Shown here piece after piece: positions 5,376-62,117 of a DNA stretch of 64,000 nt; position 1 is the stretch's first letter; every line of letters begins with the position of its first letter. The DNA comes from Perna viridis. Lineage: Eukaryota. The position numbers were made by a program, and so were the translations under genes. The notes below the pieces were generated by a model. The model was not told where the DNA came from. It worked only from the letters and a program-made list of their open reading frames with translations, and searched no databases. The stretch lies in NCBI GenBank assembly GCA_037379345.1, contig CM074512.1, positions 36,890,001 to 36,954,000 on the forward strand, read 5' to 3'.

Positions 5376-5691
5376 ATGTCTGAACCAGCCGTTGATGCAC
5401 CTGGAGATGATAAGACCGAAGATGATGCAAAGAGTACAAAAAGTGGCCAGAAAAGTCAGGCTGGTTCAAAACAGCCCTCCAGAGCTGGTTCTGCCCAGTC
5501 TGGTAAGAGTGGAAAAAGTAGTGGAAAACCTGCAATGGCAGCTACACCTGCTGGATCAGTAATGGGAGATAATCCTGCTGCTGATTGGAGACAGATGAGA
5601 AGAATTATTGCTGAGGATCCAGCATACTCTCTCGCTACTGTGCCTTTGATGGTAGACCTTTGTATCAAACATATTGTGAAAAATTTTGAAA
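5376..5691 (+). CDS. TCTE1: TCTE1 coding exon 1
   Basis: Acceptor at 5366-5367, ATG 5376, donor A|gtaagt at 5692. Confidence 0.93.
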
Positions 5692-8507
5692 GTAAGTTTT
5701 CTATAATGAAACATCATTGACCAATTATTTTGTATGGTAACAGTTCATGCATTATATTTTTGGATTCAGAAAGACAGAATAAAAGTTGAAATGGTAGAAA
5801 CCAATAGAAAATTACTTCATAATATCAGTACTTATTTATGTACTTTAGGATTTTTAGTGATATGAGGTTACAGTAGAGAATGTAGGATAGTTGTCACCAC
5901 AAATTTAAAAACTCATACTGTAAAAGTTTTAAATTTTGGGGCAGCAAATTTTCAGGTTTCTGAAAAGTCAACATGCTTGCGGATATTAATTTTCGCGGTT
6001 CTCAACGTTGAAGAAATAAAGTTTTTGAATAGTCTCAGCAGTGTGTAATCTCTCTTTTGATCAGTAATTTTACCATTAATATTTTAATAGAATTAATGAT
6101 AGCCGTTAATACAACGTTAACAAATTGACAGGTCCACATAGTTTCCTACGGCCATTTTAATCTAACAATGTATTCTTAATTAAAATTCAAAAGAACTCAC
6201 TTAATTGCCCAAGCCGTAGCTCATTGTAGGGATTAAATTTTGACACTTTAATTGCATGTTTACAGATTAACTTTTTATTGACAGTTCTAAGCGTGTGTAT
6301 TTAACAGAAGTTTTTTATCTGTGATTACCTGTAGTGTGTGTTTAACACTTACATTTTGTTCTTTTTGTGAATAAAATGTCTGAACAATATTTATTTCTTT
6401 TCTTTAATGTGACAGGTACTCTTTGGCCATTGATATAAATATGTAACCGTGTGCTTTTACCGCTTACATTTTTATAATAAATTTAGTATAAATTCATACT
6501 TGATTGCATCGAATGATATGACCTTTACAAAAAAGGACTTTTCTATTCAAAATTGTGGAAACCATGATCAAACGACTTGGTAATATGAATATATTTTCGC
6601 AGGTACTAATTTTCACAATTTTGAGGCAACTGTGAAAGTATAAAAAATTAGTACACAGCGAAAATTAATACGTTTACAGTATTTAAGAAATTCAGCACAA
6701 TTTTTTTGATGTCTGAGTATTTAAAGTTACATTTTGTCAATTGATGAATTTGCAAAATTGATTGTGTGCAATAATTATTGAAGTTACAGTTGATTATATA
6801 TTTTTATGTTTAATTTATGTTTAATACATGTATTATCTGTCATCTTTAATGAATACTTCATGGTTGTATTGAATATTTCAGACAATTCCAGCATTTTGAA
6901 TGACCTACCACTGAAGTACAAAGCCAGTGTACTGGAGAAGATATCAACAGATATTCCACTGAAAATCACTGCCAACCTAGTCCAAGAGCAGGACTACTGG
7001 CAGAGGTGCTGCAGAGCTCGTTGGGAAATCTGTGATGTTTCTCAGTATGGGAATGACTGGAAAAGAATGTACTTTGAAAGAAATCTTCAACAAATAATTG
7101 AACACTTTGTGCCGGAGACTACAGACCCAACTCAACTTAATGAAACACTACCTTTATCTGCTAATTATGTCAAAAAGATGGATATTCAACAGTTACTTCC
7201 TCCTGTTCGTGAAGCACCTAAAGGTCCTGATTTTGATGATGCCTCAGATGCTGGTAGTGATGCTGGGGATGAGCCTGAATGTGATCACTTCAACTTTGCA
7301 CCAGTTTTGAAGCAACTTACAAATTTAGAAGAATTACATTTGACATATGGTGTGAGTGATTGTGGAATGAACTTTGAATGGAACTTGTTTAAATTTACAG
7401 CCAGAGACTGCTTACAACTGGCTCAATGTGTTGCTGCTTGTAAACACTTGAAAGTTTTCCACCTCCATCGTAGTACTCTTGATGATGACAAGACCAGAGT
7501 CCTTATTAGTCACATTCTGGACCACCCAAGCCTCACAACATTAGATCTCTCTCACAATACAATCAGTGACAGAGGGGCAAGAGCAATTGGAAAGTTCTTA
7601 AACAACCGTAGCCAGCTGGTCAATTTAAATTTATGTGACAATGACATTAAAGTGCTAGGAGCTCAAGCTATCGCCCATGCGCTGACAAAAAATACAACCT
7701 TACAAAGTTTGAATCTAAGATTAAACAGACTAGGAGATGAGGGAGCATCTGCCATTTCTAGGGCCTTGCAGAGGAACTCAACATTACAAAAAATCAACCT
7801 TGGAAGTAATGAGTTTGGTGAAGCTACTGCTCCATTCCTACAAGAAGTGATCATGCAGAATACTACACTGAAGTCAATGGATTTGTCATGCAATAAACTA
7901 GGACCAGTAAGTAACCCATCTTATTTCTCCTTATCAATAAAGGTAGTTTCATTTTGTATTTGATGGCAAAACATATGTTCTCTTCAAATTGTTATTACCT
8001 AATACTTGTACTTTTTTTATATATGCAATTTTAAAATATACATAAATGCATATAAATACAGTACTTGTGAAACATGGTGCAAGGTCACTTGAATCATAAT
8101 GAATCAAGAAATTGAATTTGACTTGTTGTTGATAGACCTCACATCATGCAATCATAAAGAAAACAACATCAGTAAAAGATCAAAATTCTGATTCCTATGA
8201 ATGAGTCATTTCCCATTATCAGGTAGTGTTTGAAAAAAGTTTTGATTAACAATTTCTTGTTTTTTAGGAGGGTGGAAAGCAGATTCAAGAAGGAATGGAA
8301 GTAAATACCACCATTACACAGATGGATCTGCGTATTACAGAATGTGGCCAAGAGGCAGAATACTGTATCCAACAGATACTTCATCGTAACAAAGAGACTG
8401 AGAGACAGAGTAAAATCCAGGACAATACACCATCAGTTTGGAAACGACTTCCACCACAAGCTGCCCATAGATTTAAGCACCAAAACCCTACTATTGTTGT
8501 ATCCTAA
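5376..8507 (+). CDS. TCTE1: T-complex-associated testis-expressed protein 1 / dynein regulatory complex subunit 5 (exons 5376-5691, 6882-7906, 8268-8507; 526 aa)
   Basis: Hallmark MRRIIAEDP.YSL..VP...LCI.HIV.NF, YWQRCC..RW..CDVS.YG..WKRMYFE, CGMNFEWNLF.FT..DC, followed by RI-like LRRs and MDLRITECGQE. GT-AG junctions in phase 1 and 0; total 1581 nt ending in TAA. Confidence 0.95.
5918..6679. mobile_element. Non-autonomous DNA transposon (TA-flanked, Tc1/mariner-like) in TCTE1 intron
   Basis: Imperfect TIRs ctgtaaaagttttaaatttt / reverse complement ctgtaaacgtattaattttc; TA on both sides (5916-5917, 6680-6681); no ORF. Confidence 0.7.
6882..7906 (+). CDS. TCTE1: TCTE1 coding exon 2 (LRR region)
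   Basis: tttcag acceptor, donor CCA|gtaagt at 7907; lies inside the 385-aa ORF. Confidence 0.95.
8268..8507 (+). CDS. TCTE1: TCTE1 coding exon 3
   Basis: ttttag acceptor, phase 0, EGGKQIQEGMEVNTT... to TAA; ATTAAA at 8600-8605 with U-rich downstream tract is a candidate polyA signal. Confidence 0.92.
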   Translation, partial: EGGKQIQEGMEVNTTITQMDLRITECGQEAEYCIQQILHRNKETERQSKIQDNTPSVWKRLPPQAAHRFKHQNPTIVVS

Positions 8508-40700: not shown

Positions 40701-43700
40701 ATGGTAAAAAATTGAATAGAATTAACACTCCATTAAATGTTCTTTCATACAGCAACAGTTCTAGCCAGATCAAACCAACCATGCCAGTCTATACAAAAAC
40801 ATGAATACATATCACAAAAATAAAAAAATTCTATAAAAAACTGCCATGAACCAGCATACCTCAAGGTGTGATTCTTCAGCCAGTGTACTCTCAAGAGAGG
40901 TAGCATAGGCACTGTCCCCATCATCCTCTCGCTGGTGACCGCTGAGTCTATCAGATGATTGTGCTGTGGTTATTGGTGGAACTTTCTTCGGTGTACTGCG
41001 CTTTGTTGCTGATCTTGCCAAGGCAGCTTTAGTGGGAATAGGGGATTCATCATCTTTACCTGTCAAGAAAAAAAGAATTCAGATGAAAATCATTTTTTAA
41101 TCTTTCCTTTCTCAAATCATGATAACAAAATGTACATGACCAATCTTTCAATTTTTTTTCATTCCAGTTTTAGATGAAAGAATAAGAATTAAAAAAGAGC
41201 ATAAAAAGTCCAAAATGTATGTAGAGATAATAGTAAATATGGTAAAGTCTTGGAAAATCTGGCCTTATTATTAGTTAAAATAATTACTGAAACTCAAATT
41301 ATAGTATCATAGTTCTGATCCTGTGAAAAAAAGTGAAAAACATACTGTTGTGGACAATTTTTCTCATTTCTCAAAAGTTAAAAAAAAACAAAAAAAAAAA
41401 AAAAAAACATGAAAATATTCAATGAATCATTCAGGACAACTCAGTAGTGAATTGTTTTTTTTTTAATGAGCCTGTAAGATAAGTAGGAGTACTACACATT
41501 TCAAGCACACAATCCAACTTCAGAATTAAATTCTATAAGCATATTTGTAATTCATTCAAAACAACTACAAAAGATTTAAATCTGCATGTTGTTTGATTTG
41601 CACTTTAAACAAAAAAAAGTTCCAAGTTTAATAAACTACAAAACATGAACTGTAAATTCTTCTAACTCCTGAATAATATGACCCTGGTTCACCAAGGTTT
41701 CCTATTTATTACTAAGAGGCATGCTTCTACCAGGTTATTCTTAAGTGTAGATCTATTATCACAATGAAACAAAATAAAATGCATAAGACATGTTTACATA
41801 ACACAGCCAATATACTTGGCAGGTTAAAGAAATATTATAAACAGTTCTATAGTAACTGGTGACTTTAATTACATCAAAAAAGTCATAAAGGAAAATGTGA
41901 ATAGTTCTACTTTAAAATTTACGAATGTACTTGAAGCCAAAACATTTAAATACTTTCTTAGAAGAAAGACGATTCATCGTGACTTACAAATTTTTCATAA
42001 TGAAGACAACATGAGAAAAATTTTGAACCATAGTAACTCTTGCAGCATTTGAGAAATAAGTCTGTAAATGACATCAGCAGGAAATCTGATAATCCAAGCT
42101 ATGAAAAGTAGTTTTAGACTGTTGACTTTTTTGTTAATCTATGTTTGCTTCTTCAAAAAAAAAAACAAAAAAAAATAGCTCCAGGTCAACAGGGAAAATA
42201 GTTTTTGGCAAGACTGTTGTGATGTTAACCTTCTATAGGAAGTGATTTTTAAGGGTTTTTCTGTTGACATTGGGAGTGTAACCAGCCTTACCTCTCCAAT
42301 AATCTTCATTGTATGTGTTAGGAGGGGTAACATCAGCTACAACAAAGTTAGTACAAGAGTTAATTCTACAAACACAGTTAGTGACTAAAAAATAAATAGC
42401 TAGAGTGGACATGATATATCCTAAAGGTAACATTAAGTCTGGCAAAATCACTTGGGTGAACTGTAACAAGGGTAATTCAAATTTTCTTTTTTATTCATTT
42501 CATGAAAATGTTTTAGTTATTTTATCAGTTCCGTCTACAAAATAATTTGATTGTTGGCATTATTGTTTTGATGTGTTACATCTAATAAGGAAGTGTCTAA
42601 AAATAAAGTAATTTTTACAAAAAATTACCCATATTACAGTTTTCATTAAGCAACAGATATCCTAATAATACCATAGAGTTTTAACAAAGATTATGAAGAG
42701 GCAACTAAACACTAACAAGGTAAAATCATCAATAATTAATCAGCACAAAATTCACTAGGGTATGAAAAAAAAGGGGGAGATTAAGTACCAAGAGGTCATT
42801 TACTAAAGCCATTGCAAGTATCTACTGTACATGATTATAACAAAGGTTATTTGTACTAATCATGTTTGTGTAAGTCCATAGACATGAAGACTACAATTAA
42901 ACTTCTGGATTTTTTTGTCTAAGCTAACTACACTCTATAACAACTGTTTGCTAGCATATCAAAACTAATCTTACACACTCTATTCTAAGGCTGGGGCTAT
43001 TAATGGGTATTTGGTATAACCCTCTGATAATCACTATTCAAAATATTAATAATGATATTTCAATAAAAAAAAAAATATCAAATTTAAGTGATGAAAAGCC
43101 AGCAATGAAAAAAAAAACATGCTAAAGAAGTATGCATAAAGCTATTCATAGTGTTGTCAAGAAGCAAGCCATCATTATTTCAAAAAATATATATCACAAT
43201 GATGGTAAATGACAAGATGGCTACCTTTCCTATCAGTTCATCAAATTTCCCATAAAAGTTTAATCAAAGGAATAGATGAAACAAGAGGGAAAAAATATAA
43301 GAATGAGAAAATTCGTTTTTCCAAACAATTTTGACAATCTACCAGTCCATCAGTTATTCAAGTCAAAGACCCACCTATATTTACAATCCAGGTGGAGTCT
43401 CACTACGTCTGCTTGTACTAAGTACGAAAGCAGTGAATTTAGCAGTACCACATAGAAACACCATTCTGTCAAGAGTGTTCCATTATTTTTAGAGCAAAAT
43501 CTACAAACTGTCTAGATTAGGATCATAATCACTCGTAACAACAATGGAAAACCATGAAATTAACTCTGTCATGTTGTTTTTTAATTAATGTTTGACATAC
43601 AATACAAGATTATGAACTTATCAATTAAAAGTAAAATGGACTAATATAAGGAGCTAAATTTAAAATATAAAATTGGGCTAATGATTACACATTATGTCAG

Positions 43701-46700: not shown

Positions 46701-49700
46701 TGTTTTATTTAGACTTCACCAGTACACTCCCTGTCTACTGGTAATTTACCAGTAACTGATTTTCTTAAATCATAATTTATGACCTCTTACATATAAGGCA
46801 AACAGCTCAATGCTACCTTTTCATTTAAATATTCATCAAATATTTTAAAATTAAAATCCTACTCTCAGTTTCCAAGACTAAAATACTTGGTCAAGAGAGA
46901 ACAATCCAATACTGGTGTACCCAACCAGATCTCTATCACTAAATCTCTTCCAGTTATTCTTTTCATTACAGATTCCAATTATAAACTCACAGTATTTAAT
47001 AGCCTTCAAAGAGATAATGCACCATAAGAATTGAATGACTTGTTACAAAAAGACAAGTAGGAAACAACAGGACAACCTCGTGGACTTTTTATATTATGTC
47101 TAAAGGAGCAGAAATTAAGAGGAGTTTCTATTTTCAATCTCATTGAATTACTGTTAAGAAATGTTACAAAATCCATCAAGGCCTTTAAAACCAAAAATAA
47201 ATTTGCACTGTCAGATTGTATTAATACTTCTACATATTCACCAAATTAAAAAAGTTTCAAAATAAGATTTTAAAATACAAATACATCGCTGAGGTAAGTA
47301 TCAGAGCAAGATATCAGAACAAAACAAGTGCTTTCAAGATCTTAATCTCCTTTCTTTAACACAGAAAATCACTTTGAATGTTTGTGTCATGACACAAAAT
47401 TTTGACTCTACCAGCAAATAGTCTTGTGTACCCCAGAAATAAGAAATCTTAAAACTCCAACACTTTAGAAAGATGTAAATTTTCAATATTTTTTCCTTTA
47501 AATCAACCAAACACAAGAATTAAAGAGACAAATTTAGAGCTTTTACAGAGCAAAGGTTCCCTACCCCACTTGGGAATATCAAAACTGCTTGGTTTTTGTG
47601 TAAACTTAGGGCTAAGAACTAAGACTATTAAAGAGGGAAATATAGACTACAAAAACAGATATACTTGTTACTGAGTTCTGTGGACTTAACACAGAACTTT
47701 CAAATGACGGTGTATCTTATTCACACGGAATACTTTAAGATTATAATTCAATTAAAGAATTCCAAAATTACTTAGATCATGTTGGTCTTTTTATTAGGAA
47801 TTTTAATATTTCATTTAACCTGAGTGTATAACATATTAGGAAAAATTTTCTCAATATAAAAAAACACCCACATTTTAATGTCTTGCTAAAATTCCATTCT
47901 GTCAAATTGTGTTTGTCATAATTGTTTTACTTACTACTACTTAACAAATTAAATAATTTACTTAAAACAGTTAACCTACTCATTTAGGGCTTAAATTTAA
48001 AATATTGGTAAAAAAAACATGTAATGTATTATCAAAACAGAGATGAAATGCAAGTGGCAAGGAAGAAGCAGATATGGACAAAATCTGAAGTGAAAATATA
48101 CAGTACAATAAAATATGAATTGGGACAGTAAAATTAGGATTAGGGGCAAATTCCCTTTAATATCACATCAACATAATTCTTTAAACATTAAAAACTTCTT
48201 GATTAATAAAAAGAATTTTAAAACCAATTACCCCAAATATTGAAGACATAAATAGACAATACTGGACAAGTGAATTAGTTTTAACAGTACATTATTGTTG
48301 ACTTAGTAAATCTATAATCTTAACTTAAAGTCTTGTTAAGGTGGTCAGTAAAATTTCTAGATAAACACTCAGATACCACTTCAAATGACAATATGGACAT
48401 GACTTTATTCCTTTCTAATCCACCCCCAGTTCAAACATGAAAAACCCCCCAATAAAAATTCAAACTGTAATGGTCAAATATAATGCAATCTGTTTTGTTT
48501 GTAGTTATTGAGTTGTTATCAATCGCATAATATCCTAAAATTATGACAGCTACCTACCCCACTTTTTATAAAAATAATTTTATGCATGAATACCACATCT
48601 CTTAAAAAAAATCACATTTAAAATATCAATTATGATTAAGTATTTTTAATTGAAAGCGTAATCAAGTCTCTATTCAACAGTTGTCTTGTTAAATATAAAT
48701 CAAGAAGAAAAGTCTATTGCTGAAATTTTGAATCACTACATTGACGTGATTTCTTCTTTTTAATCCTTTCTTTGTAGTGAGTTCTTCAGTAATCTGAATT
48801 GCTGTAGCTATGGATCTATACAAAAGGTAAGGTAACCAAAAATGTGTATTCAAATTAATTCTACCCTTACTGACTAATTAGCATTTGACATTGTTGGAAT
48901 GCTAAAATTAAACAGGTTTTGCACCAAGTGAAGATGAGAATTTTTAATCTTTGCTAAAACAGTTTATATATCAACTGACATACATGTATATTTGACCTTT
49001 TCAGTGATATATCTTAGAGTATGAAGCATCAAAGAAATGGCATCCTACATAAATGTTATCTTACTAGTTTTACAATTAATAAAATGGGATTTTGTGCTAA
49101 AATTGCTACCCAATAGACTTCGTGGGTTCCGATATTGAATCAGACTGTATGAAATTCTTCATTTTACAAGATACATTTTTGTATCAATAACATGTCCATA
49201 TTTATTTGTAAAATTAAGGTAAAACCATTATTTCTATAGTTTCATTTAGCTTTTTTTTTCATATAAATAAGTGCATTAAATTATTCACAATTAGTGCACA
49301 ATCAATTTATCTATTACAACATATACAAATAAATGGATAATTACCTTTCGAGACTGAACAAACTAGTCCCATCCCATAACCAAAAGTCATAATTACTCCA
49401 CAAGGTACATTCTACAAAATCTCAGATTCACAAGTTCATGAGAATCTGCAAGTTCTTATCACTTTTCTGCAATTATGTGATTTTTGTATTACTCAAAAAC
49501 TATGTTCCCAATCCTGTAACTATATTTCTTATTGTATTGTACTTTCTGTATCCAAGAATTACAAACGGAAAATAAACAGACAATTAAGTAATTTTCATTA
49601 ATCTTGTTTCGATCCAGCTAACCGTGTTACCAAATGGAGTCAATGAATGCAAATTATCCGTATAGTTAGAATTGTAATTTTCCTCCCTCTTCTGAACCAA

Positions 49701-52700: not shown

Positions 52701-55700
52701 ATAATGACATTGTGATTTTACATGATTCTGGTTTAAATAACTATTAAAAATTGAGAATTATCTAATTAATGTCAAAAATGAATAGCTATCATTTGTTGTA
52801 CTGTAACTGACACAAATATGACACAACTTGCATATGATCAAACTTTCCTATTTACAGTGAAAATTACATAGTAATACTTTTTAATGCTTTGTCCTCAAAA
52901 TTTAAATGACGATCTATTGTCAAAGCACAGAAAAGATTATAGGGTGTTGCTTAAGACTCACTTTGTTACACCTAAATGTTTCTTGTATCTAATGTCTCAA
53001 GTAATATTTCTTTCAGACATAATTTTATTGAACGAATTGTGATTGAATTTACTTCAAGGTTATTTTCTCCCACGTCAATCTATGCTGCTATGTGCATGTG
53101 AGCCCAAGTTTGACTTCCCAATAGAAAATTCTCAAAATAAAGTTTCAATGCTGTCTTTAAAAGAATATAAGGAAAATGAATATGGTGAACATGTCAAAGA
53201 GACAATAACACCATCAGGAAGAAAATGTCAGTTCAAGGCCACAATATTAGGTGACCATGAGGCAGCATTGTTTGTTGCTTCAATACAACAGCAAACTCAA
53301 ACCTTGGCTTTGATTACTTTGTTGAAGAATACATGTCTAGGCTTAAAAACACCAGAGGTTTTTCATAATTCTGCCTAAAGTGAAAATTGTCTTTCAGTTT
53401 AAGGGTTCTTTTATCATTACTTTTTGAAAGACTGACTTTTTACTGGAATTCTATACATGAAGTATGATAATAGTTCAGCCCAATCTGATAAAGTCAAAAA
53501 AATGTTGCAATTGAATGATGGAATGAATGCTCATATAAAATCTGTATGGGAGGAGTATACAAATAAGTTCCAGCCAGCCTATGTGCACTTACATGGCTAA
53601 ATTTACCATATAACAGGACATACATGTATTGGCTGATGATCAATTCGATAGCCGGTAAATAAGATGCTAGATACTTCAGAATAATTAACAAGGAATTATC
53701 ACTGACAAAAACAGTAGACAACAGAAGTGACACAATCTGATGGATTCCTATATACATGTTACTAACACAAACTCCCAATACACCAATTCAAAATGCCTAA
53801 ATCTGTCAGTTCAAAGACTTGTATACTTCATGGTTGATCAGCGTTTTACTTCATTCAATCTACTGATAAAACTAACACAGAACCTATCAAATATTTATAA
53901 TGGCTGGTCAATTAACGTAATTGCAGTGCTAGAATTTTAATGGCCGACTCAATTCCCCCTTGCGAATAGTGCTTGCCTGCAACAAACTCATAAATAGTGT
54001 TGTTTTCAAGCCAAGTTCTTAATCAATCCAATAACATGAAAAATTGAGTAAGGTAAATTATTTATTCTAGTCCCTAAGCAGTGTGACATTAAATGATTCT
54101 ACTTCAACCCAGGACAATCTGAGACAATGCCTTCCTGTTCTAAGCTTAATATAGATAAAGACAATAAGACTACAGAACACAAAGTGACATTAACCTCCAA
54201 TCACTGCCTCATAAATATTTTCATTAATATCAACACACATCAATATCGTCAAAAGAGATGTCAACTATCATAATACTACAATATCACAATCCTGGCAGAA
54301 TGCTTAACCAATTAACATCCGCTCCCAGCACCCTATAGAAACCCATATCTGAAATCAATCACTAATTGAGCAAGACTCTGCAAAAATGAATGAAATTTAC
54401 CAACAAAAATCGAACATTCACTGGAGCAAGGAGAAGAATTCATCTATGAATTGAATTTAGAGCATTTAAACAAATTGAAGGTTACAGCAGTCACGTCACC
54501 GTCATACCTTGTTTTCTGATGATCTGTCGATGGTAAGGTAAACTGTGTTGGAAGTAAACAGTACAGAATGTCTTAGAGCAATATTTGTCATCAAATTTAA
54601 AATCTAATCAATTTTCAAGTGCTACTTGTTCAATCAATTTAGTCACATGCTTTCAAAATCTCAGCTGGAAATGTCCAAAAGTGGAAAATAAATTGGCTCA
54701 CTGCATTATGATTTTCTTCCTCACCCCATGTTCATATCATTTTTTTTGTTAACTGACTCTCCACAATGTTTACTATATTTATGGCTTACAAACAAATTAT
54801 TATGTGAAAGCTGCAAGGTCATCTGTTTGCAAATACATTTGAATTAATTAAAAGCAATGTAAGTAAATATTTAGTTTATAAAGAAATGTTTAGTAACAAT
54901 GTGTGAATTACAACTGTAAAAAGCAGTTAGTGCTTAATGAATCAACATATGAGCAACTGGTACAAACATACATGTATAAATTGGGAGTTATATAAGTAAG
55001 AAAATTAAAGGGATAGTTTTAATGGATTAAAAAATTATTAAAAAATATGAAACATAGCAAAAGGAGGTCAAAAGGACAATTCAGAGAACTGAAGGGTACA
55101 AAACATAACAGCTACAAGGAAATCTAAATAACTGTAGAAAACAAGAAAAATGAAAGCTGTATTAGGATGTCTACAGGTGAACAAAGGTATGGGCCACCAC
55201 CTCTAACATCAAAGCAGCCTGCATTACCTCTTTCTGTTTCTGCTAAATCTAAACTTCCCAGTACACTGGAGCTAATTTTCGTACTTTGAATCTTCTTTCT
55301 ATTAAGGTAGTTCTGTGTGTATGAGCCTATGAGACAATAGCAAAGCATTGTGAATTAGTTAAGTGCAAAAGTGTTCAAAGCATTCATTAACATGTGAAAA
55401 CAATAGAAAATCAGCAAGAAAGTGCCTGCTTATGGTAATTTCCAGCAGAGTTAACTATTAAGTAAGTTAAGCAAGATTAATTTCACAGAAAATAATATTT
55501 GAACTCATGAAAGCAGATCAGTCTTTTAACTTGCAACTAGCTTTTATATTCAACTGGAAATGTGCAAAATAATCTGTTTTTATTATATTTTTATCTTAAT
55601 AAGCTTTTGCTAAAAGCAGACAAAACAGAAATCCAGCCGTAACTTTTCACAGGGGTATGACAATGGAAGGTTTCTAGTCATATAAGAACCATAAGAATGT

Positions 55701-58700
55701 TCTGAACTATTACAAAATGTATTTATGAACTGTAAGGTCTTATTAGCCTATTTAACCATTTCGTTAAATTGTTAAAATACTATCACAATTCGATCTGCAC
55801 ATTCATCAAAGCTACTTAGAAGGTGAAAGCTTTAAATGAATTTTAAACATGCTGGGTAAAAAACATGTCTTAATTAAAATACAAACCTGGAAAGGGAAGT
55901 GAGCTTTGTTACATAATTTTTCAGCCATAAAATTACAAAATTGCCTAAAAAACTGCCTGGAATTCTTATCATAAACTTCCAGTTGTTCAAATGCAAGTCA
56001 ATATCCTGTCTTTAATTACTTTCCATATAATTGAAAACGTCATAATTGCATAGACCAAAGTTCACTTAATGGCTGACTAAGAAGATCAAAGCCAGAACAA
56101 GTCAAGTGAATGGATTAATTTCATGCCAAACATGCAGATAATTGTAAATTAAAGTGAAACTCCTTTTTAAATATTTTGATTATGTTTTTGTGAGATACTT
56201 GATATTACTTGTACAATACAATTTCAATGTTTGTTATTTTTCTTTTAGTGGACATCAAAACATCAGTCATTGGCCAGATAACATTTTAAATACCTGAACT
56301 TCAAGATCTTAAATGATGTTAGGATTGGTTCTCCTCGATTCATTTCAAAAGGGGTACATACTTCATTACTTTAGTTGGGGGAGAGCAGGAGGATTTTACT
56401 GCTCTATTTTATCTTATTGAATATCAAAATAATTAAAGTTTCTTTCAACTAAAATGTTTGTATTAAAAGAATCTTAAATATAAACATCAACTACACTGCA
56501 ATACAGAAGCCACATGTGTACAAATGTATTCAAATCCATGTACAGTACAGTTAAATGCCCTGAAGTGAATAGCAGTATTATCATGGCATATGAAAATGGT
56601 TAGAAAAAAAGCCAGCTACAGATCTTTATGTCTGAATTACAACTTGCATTAGGAGCATTAAGAAGTTGGTTAATGTGCAGGCTGTGCATAAAATCAATGA
56701 AAATTCAAAAATTTTCTTAAAAGAAATTTTATTAGTTTATTGTATTTTTAGCAATTGCATACACGTAGGTGAACTCTGACAGAAACCAAATCATCTTAGA
56801 ATATATCCCTCATGAAATAAAATCCTTAGATCTTTCAGTTTAAAAGTTTTCATCATAATTATTTTATCAGTCCTTTTTCTTCAAATTTTTGTCTATAAAC
56901 CCACATCTGTTAGTGCTTGTCAGAAAGATCATTGTTTAAGAGAATCTTAAATACCATGTAAGGTTAACAACCTCATTTTTTGTGTTTGTTATGGGAACTC
57001 AATAAATAGTACAAGATAACCAATAATGAATAAATTATTACTTCCTGATTCTGACTAGAGGGTATAGTAATCTGATTAATGATTCTAACAAATGACCACA
57101 GTAATCTAATTAATGATTCTGACACATGACCACAGTAATCTGAGTAGCTAAGAATCAAAACAGAGTAAAAGCCTCACATGGTAACAAAAGGTAACATATA
57201 TCCTTAACTTAGTTTATGTCTAGGGTCTCTAACTTTTCCCTGCATCAATTACATGTAAAACACCTTTAATTTTCAAATAACTTCAGTGTCCTAAGTTTTA
57301 CAACAATTTCAGCACTTCCACAGGAAAGTTCCACATAAAAAAATATCTATATCTGTAACTTGAAAAATTCTCTTAGATATTTTAAGTTTCACGTGTGCAA
57401 AATGAACATGGAACAAAATGAACATCTTTCCCTCTGATACAATATTTTACTTGTATCAGGAGAAAGGAAATGAGAATCCAAGAACACCGAACTTGATGTT
57501 GGTCAGGATAATTTAAATCCCATATTTTTGTGTGTACGTGTAAAATGTGCACATATTTACATAGAAATCATTTTCAGAGTATGGAGGTGCATACTATGCA
57601 TCATGCATGAGAATTGACAATGAAATGAAAAACTTTCTTATGAGAAAAATGAGGTCGCCAACTCTAAACACAACCTGGAAGTGAAATGTTACTGAACGAA
57701 AGTTTATTCATCAAATACCTCTTGAAGTATTGAATTTAAATGATATTTTTTTCAAATCATCTTTTAATGTCTTAAATATATATTTCAGACGAAGGTTGTA
57801 AAATATTTCTTTCTTATAAAACAAGATTAGAGATTAAAATGAAACAACTAAAAACCGAAAAGTAACAAAGTCCCTTTTTTTGTCAAACCCTCCTTATTAT
57901 ATGCTTTTGCAGCTGATAATGAGTATCTTGAAACTTATTTGGATTATTTCTATCAATTTTCTACCTTAACAGTATGTTTTAAAATAAAAAAAAAATAAAA
58001 AAACACGAAATTTAAGTTCCAACCGAAACTGGAAATGTCTGATTTCCTGACTTTTGAGAATATAAGTTTCTTTCCTTCACATTTTTGTTGGATTTACAGC
58101 ATCAAGGTAAATTAATTAACCAATCAATTGCAAAATACTGATCTTTTGTCTAACAAAATTCTATAGCAATCTAAGTCTAAAAAACTTTTTTTCTCACATT
58201 TTGACCTTCAAAATTGCACTGCATACAATACATAAATGTATATATTTTACACAACAAAATACAGTATGTACAAAAATGTACAAATAATTGAACACAAAAT
58301 GTACATTTATGCCCAATAATACCAATAATAACATGAATCTCAGACAACAAGTAAATGGTCATACATGTACCAGTATGTTCACAAAGGCAAGCTAGGCAAA
58401 CTATTTCTGATCTAAAGCAATAAACAGCTACCCATGACACTAATCCCAGTAAGATAATGCATGCAAGCATTTTGGGCATTACTGATCATGCAGGTTATAA
58501 CTTGGTCATGCTACCCAACAAATGTAACTCCAGGTACAAAATCGTTTCTTTTATACAATCAGGAAAATAGAAGTCAATTTATTCAATGCCAAACCCCTGC
58601 TCAATATTATATTTAAGTATGTCAACCAAACAAGGAGTGCAAATGTGTAAAAATAATTTCTACAAAATACTGCATTCATCTTAAATGTTAAAATAATAAT

Positions 58701-59256
58701 GTAGTTGAGAGTTTGGGTTTAGGTTTATCAAGCATTACATAATTCTATCATCTGGACTGAATTCAATTTTAGTTTACTTTGAGAGTAATTATAAAAATGT
58801 GTAAAACTGGCATCTTTGATATCAACCCATGATACTAAGCACAGGTCTGACAGGCAAGTGGAGGAAAAAATTAAGAAAAATGCTGACTTCTTTTATTTAG
58901 ATCTTTCCTAAACAGAAGATAATTAAATATTTTTTTCTAATTCAACAGTTAATCCTAATCATCCTACATCTACACAGAATGATAGATTCCCAGCTTCATT
59001 TTTATATCTCCTATGTACATGTAAGTGAAAAATTATTGTAATCAAAATTCACTGAATGCAGTATTTATGGAAACACAGGTGCAAGAGGTTTTGAGTTTGA
59101 ACACTTTGTACCTGGTTCTTGCTGGGACTCCTCAACAGCATTTATCCCAACTACAGTAATTCTACGTTTAGGAACTCGTTTACCATTGTTTATACTGTCT
59201 TGGCCACCGTCTTCACCCCAAGTGTTTCTTGCCTTTGGGGGACCTTCATTAAAAGA
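16465..59256 (-). CDS. TOGARAM1: TOG array regulator of axonemal microtubules 1 (crescerin-1/FAM179B), 3' part: linker + TOG3 + TOG4; 5' end beyond the window
   Basis: In-phase GT-AG chain: 59256-59112, 55326-55228, 46409-46335, 42336-42292, 41059-40860, 36889-36690, 35479-35202, 33310-33203, 29516-29338, 27786-27588, 24812-24722, 24084-23959, 23706-23601, 23272-23186, 22681-22533, 21743-21585, 20639-20513, 20078-19978, 19722-19542, 18789-18573, 17060-16974, 16721-16465. TOG signatures: W-E-x-K..GL..IRRLA.FH, EVKNLRSQVSRSA, GESNGFIREDVDK, LDSSPETRY.GRK, DW.DR..GI, IFDKFLPRLQDPNSKVNLYALQ. Confidence 0.92.
16974..17060 (-). CDS. TOGARAM1: TOGARAM1 exon (TOG4)
   Basis: 87 nt phase 1/1, DGGLLLQPLANQAQ. 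Confidence 0.9.
17649..18518. mobile_element. Degraded pogo/Tc2-like non-autonomous DNA transposon
   Basis: Left end accatatatacttaagtataag...tataagtc; right end tataagtcga...gcgaatatacacgata; resembles the TACCGTATATACTCGAGTATAAG TIR class. Confidence 0.5.
18573..18789 (-). CDS. TOGARAM1: TOGARAM1 exon (TOG4)
   Basis: 217 nt phase 0/1, IFDKFLPRLQDPNSKVN. Confidence 0.93.
19040..19311. mobile_element. AGGC...GCCT-ended MITE (Kolobok-like by termini)
   Basis: ta|aggct... and ...tttggcct|aa ends; similar ends at 17468-17555, 27324-27548, 62118-62366. Confidence 0.45.
19542..19722 (-). CDS. TOGARAM1: TOGARAM1 exon (TOG4 start)
   Basis: 181 nt phase 2/0, SNDWKDRHKGITQLL. Confidence 0.92.
19978..20078 (-). 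CDS. TOGARAM1: TOGARAM1 exon (TOG3-4 linker)
   Basis: 101 nt phase 0/2, GLGEMPSESSSARG. Confidence 0.9.
20513..20639 (-). CDS. TOGARAM1: TOGARAM1 exon (TOG3 end)
   Basis: 127 nt phase 2/0, YNGRKILNLLMGHPDFNKMLEKHLP. Confidence 0.92.
21585..21743 (-). CDS. TOGARAM1: TOGARAM1 exon (TOG3)
   Basis: 159 nt phase 2/2, HKNVNVRRTTS...DRILP...DSSPETR. Confidence 0.93.
22533..22681 (-). CDS. TOGARAM1: TOGARAM1 exon (TOG3)
   Basis: 149 nt phase 0/2, GESNGFIREDVDKVL. Confidence 0.93.
23186..23272 (-). CDS. TOGARAM1: TOGARAM1 exon (TOG3)
   Basis: 87 nt phase 0/0, VKNLRSQVSRSAIVCIGDLF. Confidence 0.93.
23459..23565. repeat. Perfect 53-bp tandem duplication
   Basis: cttcataacatattcattttatcgaaagagttatgtcaatttaagacaaact starts at 23461 and again at 23514. 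Confidence 0.92.
23601..23706 (-). CDS. TOGARAM1: TOGARAM1 exon (TOG3)
   Basis: 106 nt phase 2/0, (W)EVKCNGLNSIRRLALFH. Confidence 0.93.
23959..24084 (-). CDS. TOGARAM1: TOGARAM1 exon (TOG3 start)
   Basis: 126 nt phase 2/2, DWQPYRDPDHALRDAM. Confidence 0.9.
24722..24812 (-). CDS. TOGARAM1: TOGARAM1 linker exon
   Basis: 91 nt phase 1/2, S/P/K-rich, gtaagt donor. Confidence 0.85.
24966..25020 (-). mobile_element. 5'-truncated SINE/LINE 3' tail insertion
   Basis: CTGAATATAGCTGAAATATTGCTGATCGGGCGTTAAACCCC(AAAC)n; TSD agaactaatgag (24954-24965) / agaactaacgag (25019-25030). Confidence 0.8.
27324..27548. mobile_element. AGGC...GCCT-ended MITE
   Basis: aggccattta...ggttctca at left, tgagaacc...ggtggcct at right (inverted). 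Confidence 0.55.
27588..27786 (-). CDS. TOGARAM1: TOGARAM1 linker exon (E/K/R-rich coiled coil)
   Basis: Phase 0/1; alternative in-frame donor ending at 27597. Confidence 0.88.
29338..29516 (-). CDS. TOGARAM1: TOGARAM1 linker exon
   Basis: 179 nt phase 1/0, poly-T acceptor, gtaagc donor. Confidence 0.85.
33203..33310 (-). CDS. TOGARAM1: TOGARAM1 linker exon (symmetric, probable cassette)
   Basis: 108 nt phase 1/1, ends GIGVIGK(G), gtaggt donor. Confidence 0.78.
35202..35479 (-). CDS. TOGARAM1: TOGARAM1 linker exon
   Basis: Phase 2/1, SPFESKPKLAR...DVQVVGKGY; alternative in-frame donor ending at 35190. Confidence 0.85.
36690..36889 (-). CDS. TOGARAM1: TOGARAM1 linker exon
   Basis: 200 nt phase 0/2, MMHSLKSIRSSASKKK, Ser-rich. 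Confidence 0.87.
38073..38111 (-). CDS. TOGARAM1: Candidate 39-nt TOGARAM1 exon (MMKYLKSIHGGPK), duplicate of the start of the next exon
   Basis: ttttaacag acceptor, AAG|gtttgt donor, phase 0/0, 19/24 nt identical to the first 24 nt of exon 36889. Confidence 0.55.
38754..38922. mobile_element. Short Tc1/mariner(pogo)-type MITE
   Basis: TIRs ctgtgaaacctgtct / agacaggtttcactg followed by TA; sibling at 39407-39581. Confidence 0.7.
39407..39581. mobile_element. Short Tc1/mariner(pogo)-type MITE, sibling copy
   Basis: ta|cagtgaaaacctatct ... gggttcagtttatacaggtagccctg|ta. Confidence 0.62.
40860..41059 (-). CDS. TOGARAM1: TOGARAM1 linker exon
   Basis: 200 nt phase 1/0, ESPIPTKAALARSA. Confidence 0.87.
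42292..42336 (-). CDS. TOGARAM1: TOGARAM1 45-nt symmetric exon (DVTPPNTYNEDYWR)
   Basis: tttgttgtag acceptor, GAG|gtaagg donor, phase 1/1. Confidence 0.72.
46335..46409 (-). CDS. TOGARAM1: TOGARAM1 75-nt symmetric exon (SKVKSNHSSHFKPHVRPFLEVSGN)
   Basis: Strong pyrimidine tract ttttctcttatcag, gtaagt donor, phase 1/1, open. Confidence 0.7.
49345..49411 (-). CDS. TOGARAM1: Candidate TOGARAM1 alternative exon or internal start exon (..MTFGYGMGLVCSVSK)
   Basis: Donor AAG|gtaatt in phase 1 with downstream exons; in-frame ATGs at 49390 and 49372; acceptor ttttgtag at 49413-49412. Confidence 0.5.
49690..49735. promoter_or_regulatory. Paired CCAAT boxes upstream of the candidate internal start exon
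   Basis: gaaCCAATca (49697) and gaaCCAATta (49726), 29 bp apart, about 300 bp upstream (minus orientation) of exon 49411-49345. Confidence 0.35.
50388..50559 (+). mobile_element. Head-to-tail dimer of a truncated retroposon tail with triplicated target site
   Basis: Two copies of atcgcctgaat..agctgaaatattg...ttaaaccccaa(caat)n; caatcacaaattaaat occurs at 50388, 50468, 50544. Confidence 0.82.
54508..54542 (-). CDS. TOGARAM1: Candidate 35-nt TOGARAM1 exon (asymmetric)
   Basis: tttacttccaacacag acceptor, AAG|gtatga donor, open in all three frames. Confidence 0.45.
55228..55326 (-). CDS. TOGARAM1: TOGARAM1 99-nt symmetric exon
   Basis: tgctttgctattgtctcatag acceptor, GAG|gtaatg donor, phase 1/1, SYTQNYLNRKKIQS...AETER. 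Confidence 0.72.
57079..57142. repeat. Short imperfect tandem duplication
   Basis: atgattct.aca.atgaccacagtaatct present twice. Confidence 0.75.
59112..59256 (-). CDS. TOGARAM1: TOGARAM1 linker exon
   Basis: cttttctttttcag acceptor, CAG|gtacaa donor, phase 0/1, SFNEGPPKARNTWGEDG...RRITVVGI. Confidence 0.82.
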
Positions 59257-60932
59257 CTGAAAAAGAAAAGGTAAGTCAATAAAATTGTTGTTGTTCACTT
59301 GCTGTTGTTATAAACTGAAAAAAAAGTCAAGTATTTCCCATTTCTAAGGGCATAACTCAGCTCTGGTAAACCCATCTGGAGTATTTTGAACAATACATTT
59401 ACTTCACCAACCCTGCCTGGCAAGTGTGAATCAATATGTACAAGTATAATAAAATGTATAACTACAATAAAACTTCTGTTTTTCCTGATTCATGACATAC
59501 AAAGGTACTGAACATTGATGATAGAAAGTAGCAAAATGATACATGTACAATTGTATAAAAATGTAAGTACATGTATCAATTTACAAGTATAAATTCAACA
59601 TTCTGCATCTTCTGTACTACTGGCATTTAGTATGAAAAATTATAAATTGCACTGTACACACAAATACATCATAGAGTGACTTGTTAAGTGGACTTGAGGT
59701 TTGTTGTACCATTTACTGTTTCAAAGTTTAGGGAATGACGATGAAAAAATAACTCTTTATTTAAATGCAGAAGAATTAACTTGAAAACACATGAAAAATA
59801 GAATTTGTGATATAATTTTTAGATGTTAAAAAAAATACAAATGGCATAAGTATACATTAAAACCCAATTAAATTAAGACCAAAACTGTCAGTACCAACAT
59901 GCCTATAAAAAAGATCACAGATTCAAAATTTTGAGGACAAAGAATGCCCAAAAAATGGACCAAATTTCCAAGACATTATTCAGTAGTTATATAGTTTAAA
60001 TCAAATTTCTATAGTAAATAAAAAGACATACAACCAACAATACAAGAAGAAAAACTCAGTGAAGGTCATTAAAATGCTTGTTTTATACCATTACAAATCA
60101 CTGACAAAATATACTTTTGTTAAAACAAAAATGTATGTTTTACAAGTAAAATATAAAAAAAATGACAAACTTTTTTAAAAAGTTGTAGTGACACATTAGC
60201 CCTTCATATTGTTTGTTCACGATGACATTCAAAAACGTGAAATACCATTTTGAAAGCAGTATTTCCATTGGAAAGGACCACAGTCATTTAATAACAAGTA
60301 TAAATATTGTCGATTTTTCTAACAAGAACTCATGTTTATGATGACAGCCGAACAATGGGTTTTAATGTTATAACAAAGCAAGTCCTACACGTTCCTTTTA
60401 AAATATACAACTGTAAAAATGTTTGGCTATATTTGGTATACATTGTAAATTGTCATGGCCATGGTTGAACTGATCTGATTCAAATGATTTCAGTTTGATC
60501 TTTGAATGGATTACTGCGAAACCATAATATCTGTCAAAGTGGAAAAAAAATACATTTGTGTTAACTTGACAGACAAAAACAAATCATTTGGAGTTTTTTT
60601 TAATTCATAGTACACTTCATTTACACAAGTCTTTGAAATTAGAACCAGTCCACATGCCAATGCTGGTAATAATAGAGATGGACTTGAAGAATTTTTGCTT
60701 CCAAGCCAATGTATCTTATATAAAATTCTTTTCAGAGTGTACCTGTTCATACAGTATACATGCATGTGTACCAGACACCTTCACAATACGAAATGATTGC
60801 AAAAGTCAGAATGTCTGACTTTTGATTGAATGATTGACTGGATTGTTGTTTTCCAGGTTTCCCAACATTTACATATACAATAACACACAAATCACCAACA
60901 TGTATTGATTTATTTCAAGTAATATTTATTAC

Positions 60933-61007
60933 CTCAAACAAGTCCTCTGCATAAGGGTGTACTCTTCCAACTTTACAAAGGGCAGGAATACAAGCCCACA
61001 CACACAT
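60933..61007 (-). CDS. TOGARAM1: Candidate alternative first coding exon of TOGARAM1 (MCVWACIPALCKVGRVHPYAEDLFE)
   Basis: ATG at 61007 with A at -3 and an in-frame TAA 6 codons upstream; exactly 25 codons to donor GAG|gtaata; phase 0 matches exon 59256; more GC-rich than flanks. Confidence 0.62.
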
Positions 61008-62117
61008 TATATACAAGAGATTTTAAAATCCAGAAGATATAACTATATTCCAGTTAGAGATGTCTCATCAGCATGAACATTACGTTCCTACATACTGTAC
61101 TGGAATTTGATAAGTACATATGTACATGTACATTCCTCAGTTATTTTATTCCAATCTCCTATTTAGTTTAACAGATTTACAATATACTTATACAAATCAT
61201 GACATTAATTTGAAATATGAAATCAAACAAATCAGCGTTTAGTTCCTTTACTGACAATTTTGTCCAGACAAGTTTTGAATACCAGTGGGTTGTTAGACCA
61301 CAGTTCACTGGTGCAAGGGGTGTTATTTTACAAGCATTAGATATCACATGTATAAAATATACACAATTATAACTTTACAGTTATTATAACTACAGTATCA
61401 ATATCTCTTTCTTGAAATTTTATGCTTTGCCAATACACAATACACCTTCCAAAATGAATTCAATGATCGAAAACTCTTCATGGAAGAAAAGATTTGAGAA
61501 GATATTTATATAAATTTAACAAGTCGAAAGTCAGAATTGTCAGTTCTGATTTGTACTCAGAATCATTGTATACCTCATTTGGGCATAATAATAGCATTTT
61601 ATATCTACCGCTACCATTCCAAACAGAAATTGAATATATAAAATCTACGGTATAGAATTTTGTATTTGTTTGAACAGAAAGTCAGTCAATGCCTCCTCAA
61701 AAGATTGATTAGAATGTGTCTGAGACTTCTTACATTTAAACTCATCAATACAAGCGTTCAAAGAAAAATACAAATCAATTTAAGGTCTACTTTTTCTTTG
61801 GATTTTCAATCTAAATTTATTTACTTCCACCCAACCATGACTTCCAACCTTTTAAACAAATTTTGCATCCAAGAACTTTTTTTCAGTTCAATAAATTTTT
61901 AAGTTTGTGTAAATAAAAATCTGGCTGTCGAAACACATAAAAGTAATTTAAGTTCATTACTAACGCATCAAAAATCATTAAAGGTTAATATTGTTCTTGT
62001 ATCCCCAGCATCAGAACTATATTAATACTTCGTTCCTACAGAAAACTTAACTTAGAACTAGTAAAATAATTTTCCTACCCACCAATGGCAACTTCTTGTA
62101 CGTGTAAGCTTACATGT

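What the first reader, a model, noticed from the sequence alone, without database searches (positions are those of the whole stretch)
60933..61007. Hidden internal start exon giving TOGARAM1 a Cys-rich N-terminus with an RVxP motif
Seen: a 75-nt minus-strand segment, too short for the ORF track, runs from ATG (in-frame stop 6 codons upstream) to a GAG|gtaata donor in the phase needed by exon 59256. It encodes MCVWACIPALCKVGRVHPYAEDLFE. Established: N-terminal Cys clusters in a hydrophobic context are typical S-palmitoylation anchors; RVxP is the N-terminal ciliary targeting signal described for polycystin-2; TOGARAM1/crescerin is known as a TOG-array axonemal microtubule regulator. Inference: an isoform lacking TOG1-2 but carrying linker+TOG3+TOG4 is tethered to the ciliary membrane, acting as a membrane-to-axoneme linker. 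I do not know of this being described.
Basis: partly seen in the sequence, partly recalled or inferred. Interest (0 to 1): 0.85.

Follow-up and report, generated by a model that had tools for sequence, protein, structure and literature searches.

The report
Conserved alternative first exon of mussel TOGARAM1
A 25-codon stretch inside the first intron of a mussel cilia gene (TOGARAM1) is a real, selection-maintained alternative first coding exon that gives a shorter protein a cysteine-rich head, but whether that head anchors the protein to the ciliary membrane is still untested.

Summary
The ATG at 61007, the in-frame TAA six codons upstream, the GAG|gtaata donor at 60933 and phase 0 into exon 59256 are all present.

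The open frame alone is at chance level: intron 1 holds 28 ATG-to-GT phase-0 segments of at least 25 codons. Two independent lines make it a real exon:
- **RNA:** one contig in run X2 joins 60933 to 59256 exactly, at about 8% of the depth of the canonical exon1-exon2 junction. Three other runs show nothing.
- **Conservation:** the same N-terminus heads RefSeq isoforms X16 and X17 of Mytilus californianus and lies in intron 1 of M. galloprovincialis. Over 72 nt, differences fall 5:1:11 by codon position and dN/dS is 0.10. The 200-nt flanks align no better than shuffled sequence.

I found no counterpart in the Pinctada or Pecten gene, so the exon looks restricted to mytilid mussels.

The isoform drops TOG1-TOG2 and keeps the linker, TOG3 and TOG4, like vertebrate TOGARAM2. 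Cys2, Cys6, Cys11 and RVxP are kept in all three mussels, but no better than the rest of the peptide. Palmitoylation and ciliary-membrane targeting remain plausible hypotheses.

The scan had noted this stretch itself and a sister start exon (49345-49411) on this window, not on other DNA.

The parts
61023..61025 (-). In-frame TAA stop six codons upstream of the start codon. It closes the frame, so the ATG at 61007 is the first in-frame start.
   Evidence: read directly. Mytilus also has an in-frame TAA five codons upstream (alignment A1).
61008..61150 (-). Transcribed leader of the alternative exon. It is colinear with the genome in the X2 RNA contig, which has 92 more letters beyond 61150, so the exon probably reaches about 61242. 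The seen part holds 7 upstream ATGs, and about 2 more lie in the inferred part. All of their short frames end by 61054.
   Evidence: record 11: 60933-61150 = record letters 93-310 of 338. (upstream ATGs). The 200 nt upstream are not conserved with Mytilus (z = -0.5).
60933..61007 (-). Coding part of the alternative first exon: 25 codons, MCVWACIPALCKVGRVHPYAEDLFE. Cys2, Cys6, Cys11 and R15-V16-H17-P18.
   Evidence: Spliced in RNA. Orthologous to the M. californianus X16/X17 N-terminus: 19 of 24 identical, tblastn E = 6e-9 at genome scale. dN/dS 0.10. Single copy in the genome.
60927..60932 (-). 5' splice site gtaata after GAG, phase 0.
   Evidence: Used in the X2 contig (joint 59256/60933, ends CT..AC on the + strand = GT..AG on the minus strand). 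Mytilus has GAG|gtaatt 15 or 12 nt further on, in frame.
59257..60932 (-). Intron removed in the alternative transcript (1,676 nt). It is the 3' part of canonical intron 1.
   Evidence: "skips 1676".
59112..59256 (-). Exon 2 (linker, SFNEGPPKAR...). It is the shared acceptor for exon 1 and for the alternative exon. It starts in phase 0 and ends in phase 1.
   Evidence: The canonical exon1-exon2 junction is read in X11 (3 reads), X2 (depth 39) and X3 (depth 24) as a loose end at 59259 that equals the reverse complement of the end of exon 1.
55228..55326 (-). Exon 3 (linker). It served as the internal positive control for splice detection.
   Evidence: The exon2-exon3 joint is seen in X1 (depth 834), X2 (45.6) and X3 (9.3).

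Best explanation
The segment is the coding part of a genuine alternative first exon of the single-copy TOGARAM1 (crescerin) orthologue of a mytilid mussel. It lies in intron 1, 6.5 kb downstream of the large exon 1 that encodes TOG1 and TOG2. Exon 1 is outside the window, at G000:C2:36957538-36959442.

A transcript that starts upstream of 61150 splices 60933 to the normal acceptor of exon 2 at 59256. Translation from the ATG at 61007 then puts a 25-residue peptide in place of the first ~635 residues. The product has linker, TOG3 and TOG4 only. By analogy with Mytilus isoforms X16 and X17 (1,127 and 1,103 aa) it should be about 1,100 aa. This is the architecture of vertebrate TOGARAM2, reached here through a second promoter rather than a second gene.

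Because ARMC9 binds the TOG1-TOG2 part in vertebrates, the short form should be uncoupled from ARMC9. It keeps the microtubule-lattice-binding TOG3 and TOG4.

**Shown:** the splice, the frame, purifying selection on the peptide, and restriction to mytilids among the genomes tested.

**Inferred, with my odds:**
- The ATG at 61007 is the start used: about 0.75.
- The conserved Cys2, Cys6, Cys11 in a hydrophobic and then basic context are S-acylated and hold the isoform on a membrane, as in MAP6 and MAP6d1: about 0.4.
- RVxP adds ciliary delivery: about 0.2.
For: **RNA.**: X2 contig (338 nt, depth 3.47) runs 61150 to 60933 and then directly 59256 to 59229, with GT..AG ends. The same run carries exon1-exon2 (depth 39) and exon2-exon3 (45.6) joints, so it is RNA.

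**Orthologues.**: RefSeq M. californianus isoforms X16 and X17 begin MCVWACLPKLCKIGRVEPYAEDVF... and continue into exon 2; full-length Mytilus proteins show exon 2 starting at (L/S)FNDGPPKAR, so the peptide is a separate exon there too.

**Codon-level conservation.**: the exon lies in intron 1 of M. californianus (L015:27486) and M. galloprovincialis (L016:15982). Nucleotide identity to the window is 76%. Differences fall 5:1:11 by codon position (P = 0.008). dN is 0.145, dS is 1.40 and dN/dS is 0.10. The length differences at the 3' end are in frame (15 and 12 nt). Both 200-nt flanks score like shuffles (z = -0.5 and -0.9) against z = 18.7 for the exon.

**Composition and copy number.**: exon-like GC (0.45) with the same codon-position gradient as exon 1; the exon and the gene are single copy.

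**Literature.**
- TOGARAM2 has only the TOG3/TOG4-like pair (PMC11541697).
- ARMC9 binds the TOG1-TOG2 fragment, RPGRIP1L binds the linker, and TOG3 and TOG4 give lattice binding (10.1101/817213).
- MAP6d1 and MAP6-N are palmitoylated on N-terminal Cys5, 10 and 11 (PMC4272302).
Against: - **Expression is weak and patchy.** It was seen in 1 of 4 runs, at about 8% of the canonical junction. It is absent from X1, where exons 2-3 reach depth 834. One contig carries it, with only 28 letters on the exon 2 side.
- **No start site was seen.** The leader implied by the contig carries about 9 upstream ATGs, which is poor for scanning. Either the real start site is nearer the ATG or translation is inefficient.
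- **No protein evidence.**
- **Composition is not a signal.** Cys-rich hydrophobic peptides are what this TG-rich intron encodes by chance, so the composition alone is not evidence of lipidation.
- **The motifs carry no extra weight.** Cys and RVxP are conserved no better than the whole peptide.
- **Limited range.** No counterpart was found in Pinctada or Pecten, so any function is lineage-specific.
Confidence: 0.85

Rival explanations
1. The peptide is both S-palmitoylated and recognised through RVxP. The TOG3-TOG4 isoform is therefore delivered to and held on the ciliary membrane, and it bridges membrane and axoneme.
For: - Cys2, Cys6, Cys11 and R-V-x-P are identical in three mussels, with x varying (H or E).
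- An N-terminal RVxP targets polycystin-2 to cilia (PMC3044124 citing Geng 2006).
- ARL13B, another Joubert-syndrome protein, combines palmitoylation with an RVxP motif for full ciliary enrichment (PMC10011728).
- TOG3 and TOG4 bind the microtubule lattice.
Against: - Nothing here measures lipidation or localisation.
- By my own rough estimate from typical residue frequencies (not computed here), RVxP is expected by chance in about 6% of 400-aa proteins.
- Its conservation here equals that of the neighbouring residues.
- In ARL13B the motif's role is unclear and an amphipathic helix does much of the work.
- Full-length TOGARAM1 reaches cilia without such a signal.
- The exon is absent outside mytilids.
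Confidence: 0.15
2. The exon is coding and selected, but the peptide works without lipid. It could be a docking site for a partner protein, or a Met-Cys N-terminus that tunes stability through the Cys branch of the N-degron pathway. That second idea is recalled knowledge and was not tested here.
For: - dN/dS of 0.10 shows selection on the residues but not which property is selected.
- The invariant residues W4, P8, G14, Y19 and the acidic AED tail are not needed for acylation.
- Mytilus extends the exon with an acidic LSD(D)EE tail.
Against: - No partner or degron evidence.
- Three invariant cysteines within 11 residues, followed by K12 and R15, fit known N-terminal acylation sites at least as well.
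Confidence: 0.3
3. The junction is low-level splicing noise, or an untranslated or decay-targeted transcript, and no protein is made from the ATG at 61007.
For: - One low-depth contig in one of four runs.
- About 9 upstream ATGs in the leader.
- If the exon were included after exon 1, the in-frame TAA at 61023-61025 would end the reading frame.
Against: - Noise does not explain a third-position-biased substitution pattern, dN/dS of 0.10, in-frame length changes, and a kept ATG and phase-0 donor across a divergence at which the flanks are unalignable.
- The same exon is modelled as a start exon in M. californianus RefSeq.
Confidence: 0.05
4. Chance open frame in an AT-rich intron, with no exon at all. 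This was my starting view.
For: Twenty-eight comparable ATG-to-GT phase-0 segments of at least 25 codons lie in the same intron.
Against: The exact junction is present in RNA, and the frame is conserved in two Mytilus genomes at the syntenic place.
Confidence: 0.01

Closest known systems
RefSeq models XP_052097641.1 and XP_052097642.1 (TOGARAM1-like isoforms X16 and X17, Mytilus californianus)
   Same: Orthologous start exon in intron 1. The same first 24 residues at 79% identity. The same splice into exon 2. The same loss of TOG1-TOG2.
   Different: These are automatic gene models with no study behind them. The Mytilus exon is 5 codons longer at its 3' end (4 codons in M. galloprovincialis). 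The window species is another mytilid, 87% identical over the whole protein.
Vertebrate TOGARAM2 (FAM179A, crescerin-2)
   Same: Only the C-terminal TOG pair, similar to TOG3 and TOG4 of TOGARAM1 (PMC11541697). It lacks the ARMC9-binding TOG1-TOG2 part.
   Different: It is a separate paralogous gene. Here one gene makes the short form from an internal start exon.
MAP6 (STOP) and MAP6d1 N-terminal palmitoylation domain
   Same: Microtubule-binding proteins whose first ~12 residues carry three cysteines (5, 10, 11) that are palmitoylated and place the protein on Golgi and plasma membrane (PMC4272302). Here the cysteines are at 2, 6 and 11 in a hydrophobic and then basic context.
   Different: No homology was tested or claimed. 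Acylation is not shown here. MAP6 binds microtubules through Mn/Mc modules, not TOG domains.
ARL13B (palmitoylated, RVxP-bearing ciliary membrane GTPase)
   Same: Joubert-syndrome ciliary protein that combines N-terminal palmitoylation with an RVxP motif for full ciliary enrichment (PMC10011728).
   Different: In ARL13B the RVxP motif is C-terminal, and an N-terminal amphipathic helix that binds TULP3 does much of the targeting. Here both motifs sit within 18 residues and nothing has been tested.
Polycystin-2 N-terminal RVxP ciliary signal
   Same: RVxP close to the N-terminus. It is necessary for ciliary delivery of truncated polycystin-2 and sufficient to send the transferrin receptor to cilia (PMC3044124).
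   Different: Polycystin-2 is an integral membrane protein sorted on vesicles. The mussel isoform is a soluble protein unless it is lipidated.

Membership tests
TOGARAM1 / crescerin TOG-array gene | Orthology over the whole length, with an N-terminal TOG pair, a long linker and a C-terminal TOG pair | tested here: met
   tblastn of M. californianus X9 covers 1,679 of 1,689 residues in about 20 colinear exons at 87% identity. Relatives are named TOGARAM1-like and carry CLASP_N and XMAP215_CLASP_TOG Pfam hits.
TOGARAM1 / crescerin TOG-array gene | Single gene in this genome, with no TOGARAM2-like paralogue | tested here: met
   The TOG4 exon finds only its own place in G000 at E <= 0.01.
Genuine alternative first coding exon | Exact exon-exon junction in RNA | tested here: met
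   X2 contig joins 60933 to 59256 with GT..AG ends. It was seen in only one of four runs, at low depth.
Genuine alternative first coding exon | Reading frame, start codon and splice phase kept in related species, with a coding substitution pattern | tested here: met
   Differences of 5:1:11 by codon position, dN/dS 0.10, in-frame length changes, and flanks that cannot be aligned.
Genuine alternative first coding exon | Own transcription start (capped 5' ends upstream) | not testable with these tools
Contigs cannot show starts. The X11 raw reads gave no cover here.
Genuine alternative first coding exon | Translation from the proposed ATG | not testable with these tools
   No ribosome profiling or proteome data were available. 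A at -3 is present in all three species, but there are about 9 upstream ATGs.
N-terminal S-palmitoylation anchor (MAP6/MAP6d1 type) | Several cysteines within the first ~12 residues, in a hydrophobic context followed by basic residues | tested here: met
   C2, C6, C11, then K12 and R15. They are invariant in three mussels, but chance frames of this intron are also Cys-rich.
N-terminal S-palmitoylation anchor (MAP6/MAP6d1 type) | Measured acyl incorporation and Cys-dependent membrane binding | not testable with these tools
   This needs acyl-biotin exchange, acyl-RAC or metabolic labelling.
RVxP / VxPx ciliary targeting signal | R-V-x-P present and kept, with x free to vary | tested here: met
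   RVHP in the window and RVEP in both Mytilus species. The conservation is no stronger than that of the peptide overall.
RVxP / VxPx ciliary targeting signal | Motif necessary or sufficient for ciliary localisation | not testable with these tools
   This needs localisation of wild-type and RVHP-mutant fusions.
TOGARAM2-like short form | Only the C-terminal TOG pair, encoded by a separate paralogous gene | tested here: not met
   The architecture matches. It is an isoform of the single TOGARAM1 gene, not a paralogue. So it works like TOGARAM2 but is not a member.

The most novel reading that the evidence does not exclude
Mytilid mussels evolved, inside intron 1 of their only TOGARAM gene, a new start exon whose 24 conserved residues are a combined S-acylation and RVxP module. 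It sends a TOG3-TOG4 microtubule-lattice binder to the ciliary membrane. That would be a lipid-anchored TOG-array protein linking membrane and axoneme in the heavily ciliated gill or in sperm, and a kind of TOG protein not described so far.
Probability: 0.15. Interest if true: 0.7.

Novelty: new member of a known kind. Interest (0 to 1): 0.45.

Why it matters
TOGARAM1 is a Joubert-syndrome gene that controls axonemal microtubule growth. How its TOG pairs divide the work, and what the TOG3/TOG4-only paralogue TOGARAM2 does, are both open questions.

Mussels make a TOGARAM2-like product from the same gene through a young start exon that selection maintains. The exon's only content is a 24-residue Cys-rich head. 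That gives a compact, testable handle: a 30-residue tag can be fused to GFP and mutated.

If the head is a lipid or ciliary address, this would be the first membrane-tethered TOG-array regulator. It would also be an example of a targeting module born from intron sequence. If it is not, this remains an ordinary lineage-specific alternative promoter.

For annotation, it shows that a 75-nt start exon invisible to ORF tracks can be recovered from sequence and then verified.

Tried and rejected
- **Chance frame.** This was my first reading. I rejected it.
- **Ostrea short isoforms.** O. edulis X15 and X4 (P0005, P0151) looked like the same kind of isoform, but they start inside the end of exon 1 (MGHLDQAGRFKSAS...), not at this exon.
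- **Exact-protein look-ups of Mytilus DNA.** P0171, P0172, P0156 and P0161 were not on record. Only the longest products, P0208 and P0198, worked. The Sinanodonta gene range was too long to give DNA.
- **Search with residues 1-40 of P0171.** Among proteins of 607-1,930 aa it found only the M. californianus cluster. This says nothing about shorter fragments.
- The 35-aa stop-to-stop frame for the protein search and the 25-aa peptide for the search for related loci. I did not read through stops to lengthen them.
- **Degenerate DNA pattern of the first 12 codons in JGI metagenome contigs.** No match.
- **ESM Atlas search with residues 1-30.** No usable hit.
- **Pfam on single linker exons.** Nothing above cut-off.
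- **Neutral-drift simulation.** 19 of 24 identical residues would not be surprising below about 0.2 substitutions per site. This worry was removed by the unalignable flanks and dS of 1.4.
- **Joined isoform.** Isoform lengths are taken from the Mytilus models.
- **Second reads call.** Not possible, so the contig's 92 letters beyond 61150 and the tissue of run X2 remain unknown.

Full report
**What is in the sequence**

On the minus strand an ATG at 61007 opens 25 codons (MCVWACIPALCKVGRVHPYAEDLFE) that end at 60933 before gtaata. An in-frame TAA lies six codons upstream, at 61025-61023. Exon 2 begins at 59256 after ttttcag, in phase 0.

**The gene**

- The window is G000:C2:36890001-36954000 of a 723-Mb genome.
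- A TOG exon from the window retrieved TOGARAM1-like proteins of bivalves.
- tblastn of these proteins on the window plus 40 kb of upstream flank gives about 20 colinear minus-strand exons.
- Exon 1 is a single 1.9-kb coding exon outside the window (window-equivalent 69442-67538, which is L009:5442-3538). It encodes TOG1, TOG2 and the start of the linker, and ends CAG|GTGAGT in phase 0.
- Exon 2 is 59256-59112 and exon 3 is 55326-55228.
- The candidate therefore sits in the 8,281-nt intron 1.
- The closest proteins are those of Mytilus, at 87% identity over 1,679 of 1,689 residues of M. californianus X9. The genome is therefore a mytilid mussel other than Mytilus.
- The gene is single copy.

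**Is the open frame more than chance? No, taken alone.**

Intron 1 contains 171 ATG-to-GT phase-0 segments. Of these, 28 have at least 25 codons, and several are just as Cys-rich. This TG-rich intron encodes such peptides freely.

Two weak internal hints favour the candidate. It is the only listed segment with AG|GTAA at the donor. Its GC content of 0.45 is in the top 1.3% of 75-nt windows of the intron, with the same codon-position gradient as exon 1.

**RNA evidence**

I laid four runs on 55151-61150 so that exon 3, exon 2 and the candidate were all covered.

Positive controls worked:
- The exon2-exon3 joint appears in X1 (depth 834), X2 (45.6) and X3 (9.3).
- The canonical exon1-exon2 junction appears as a loose end at 59259 in X11 (3 raw reads), X2 (depth 39) and X3 (24). 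That loose end is the reverse complement of the last 30 bases of exon 1.

One X2 contig (338 nt, depth 3.47) lies on 61150-60933 and continues directly at 59256-59229, skipping 1,676 nt with GT..AG ends.

- Its depth is about 8% of the canonical junction in that run.
- It is not seen in X1, X3 or X11.
- The contig has 92 more letters beyond my stretch, so the exon is at least 218 nt and probably about 310 nt.
- That leader holds about 9 upstream ATGs, all closing by 61054. This is a real caveat for translation unless the usual start site is closer to the ATG.
- No start site could be seen.

**Conservation**

- **Protein level.** A search with an oyster relative listed several short RefSeq isoforms. 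One of them, M. californianus X17 (with X16 in the same cluster), starts MCVWACLPKLCKIGRVEPYAEDVFLSDDEE and then runs into exon 2. Full-length Mytilus proteins fix the exon 2 boundary at (L/S)FNDGPPKAR. The match to the window is 19 of 24 residues, 51.6 bits, E = 6e-9 scaled to the whole genome, and it lies at the syntenic place.
- **DNA level.** I obtained the gene DNA of M. californianus (L015) and M. galloprovincialis (L016) through their longest products. The exon lies in intron 1 of both.
- **Substitution pattern.** Over the 72 shared nucleotides the window differs from either Mytilus at 17 positions, split 5:1:11 (4:2:11 for M. galloprovincialis) over codon positions 1, 2 and 3 (P = 0.008 against equal shares). 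Nei-Gojobori dN is 0.145, dS is 1.40 and dN/dS is 0.10.
- **Frame preservation.** The 3' end differs by in-frame 15 or 12 nt. The donor is GAG|gtaat in all three. A stands at -3 and an in-frame TAA lies just upstream in all three.
- **Flanks.** The 200 nt on either side align no better than shuffled sequence (z = -0.5 and -0.9), against z = 18.7 for the exon. The two Mytilus species align throughout.

Neutral sequence is therefore saturated between these genera, and the exon is an island kept by selection on the protein. This answers the doubt raised by my simulation.

**How old is it?**

No counterpart appears anywhere in the Pinctada imbricata or Pecten maximus gene. Best hits are at most 19 bits, with E of at least 0.19, and are scattered, some on the wrong strand. 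No other protein of 607-1,930 aa in the large database shares the N-terminus. As far as tested, the exon is mytilid-specific. Its composition fits birth from intron sequence.

**What the product is**

The short form lacks TOG1-TOG2 and keeps linker, TOG3 and TOG4. The Mytilus models are 1,127 and 1,103 aa.

In vertebrates:
- ARMC9 binds the TOG1-TOG2 fragment, RPGRIP1L binds the linker, and TOG3 and TOG4 give lattice binding (10.1101/817213).
- The paralogue TOGARAM2 has only the TOG3/TOG4-like pair (PMC11541697).

The mussel isoform therefore works like a TOGARAM2 made from the TOGARAM1 gene.

**What the peptide does**

Invariant in three species: M1 C2 V3 W4 C6 P8 L10 C11 K12 G14 R15 V16 P18 Y19 A20 E21 D22 F24. 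Variable: positions 5, 7, 9, 13, 17 and 23.

Three cysteines in 11 residues followed by basic residues resemble the palmitoylated N-termini of MAP6 and MAP6d1 (Cys5, 10, 11; PMC4272302). R-V-x-P with a free x matches the polycystin-2 and ARL13B motif.

These residues are conserved no better than the peptide as a whole, and nothing here measures acylation or localisation.

I found no paper whose subject is a lipidated TOGARAM. Among the papers that mention both words, the one I opened uses palmitoylation only as an artificial PalmMyr tag.

**Verdict**

The membrane-tether mechanism is a reasonable, cheaply testable hypothesis and not a finding.

The orthologous N-terminus already stands in RefSeq models, so the exon is not new to databases, but it is unstudied. 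The scan had noted this same stretch and a sister start exon on this window, not on other DNA.

Noticed in passing
window 49345-49389 (-): This is the second alternative start exon (MTFGYGMGLVCSVSK, donor AAG|gtaatt), the subject of note s1-770110. Its peptide matches the N-termini of M. californianus isoform X18 (MTFGDGMGLVCSSS...) and Crassostrea angulata X6 (MTFGDVMGILCSVS...), so it is older than the exon studied here. The MG...C myristoylation-like motif is preceded by a conserved Met six codons upstream, so the Gly is N-terminal only if the second AUG is used.
   Followed up: partly
window 60700-60736: A 37-nt element just downstream of the alternative exon recurs at 95-97% identity at 22 or more other places in the genome. 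RNA contigs of X1 and X2 cross it and run on into unlike sequence, so it is an expressed dispersed repeat.
   Followed up: no
window 59179-59184, 55224-55228 and about 41040-41051 (-): There is more alternative splicing in the linker. An X3 contig leaves exon 2 early, near 59179-59184 (internal GT after ...AACAATG), and continues in the exon encoding DDESPIPT. Exon 3 shows two 3' ends (55228 and 55224) leading to different downstream exons. Mytilus isoforms X5 and X17 lack the same KRVPKRRITVVGINAVEE... piece.
   Followed up: partly
window 59319-59513: An X1 contig of depth 16 covers intron sequence directly upstream of the exon 2 acceptor, with no joint reported. It could be a retained intron end or another minor exon.
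   Followed up: no
window 55151-59350, run X1: Exons 2-3 reach word depth 834 in a run of only 79 million letters, so this TOGARAM1 gene is very highly expressed in that coded sample. The alternative exon is not detected there.
   Followed up: no
window 5376-5720 and 6806-7963 (+): The neighbouring plus-strand gene has a 385-codon open exon rich in leucine-rich-repeat-like LxLxxN motifs, preceded by a Ser/Gly/Lys-rich start exon. It was not identified.
   Followed up: no
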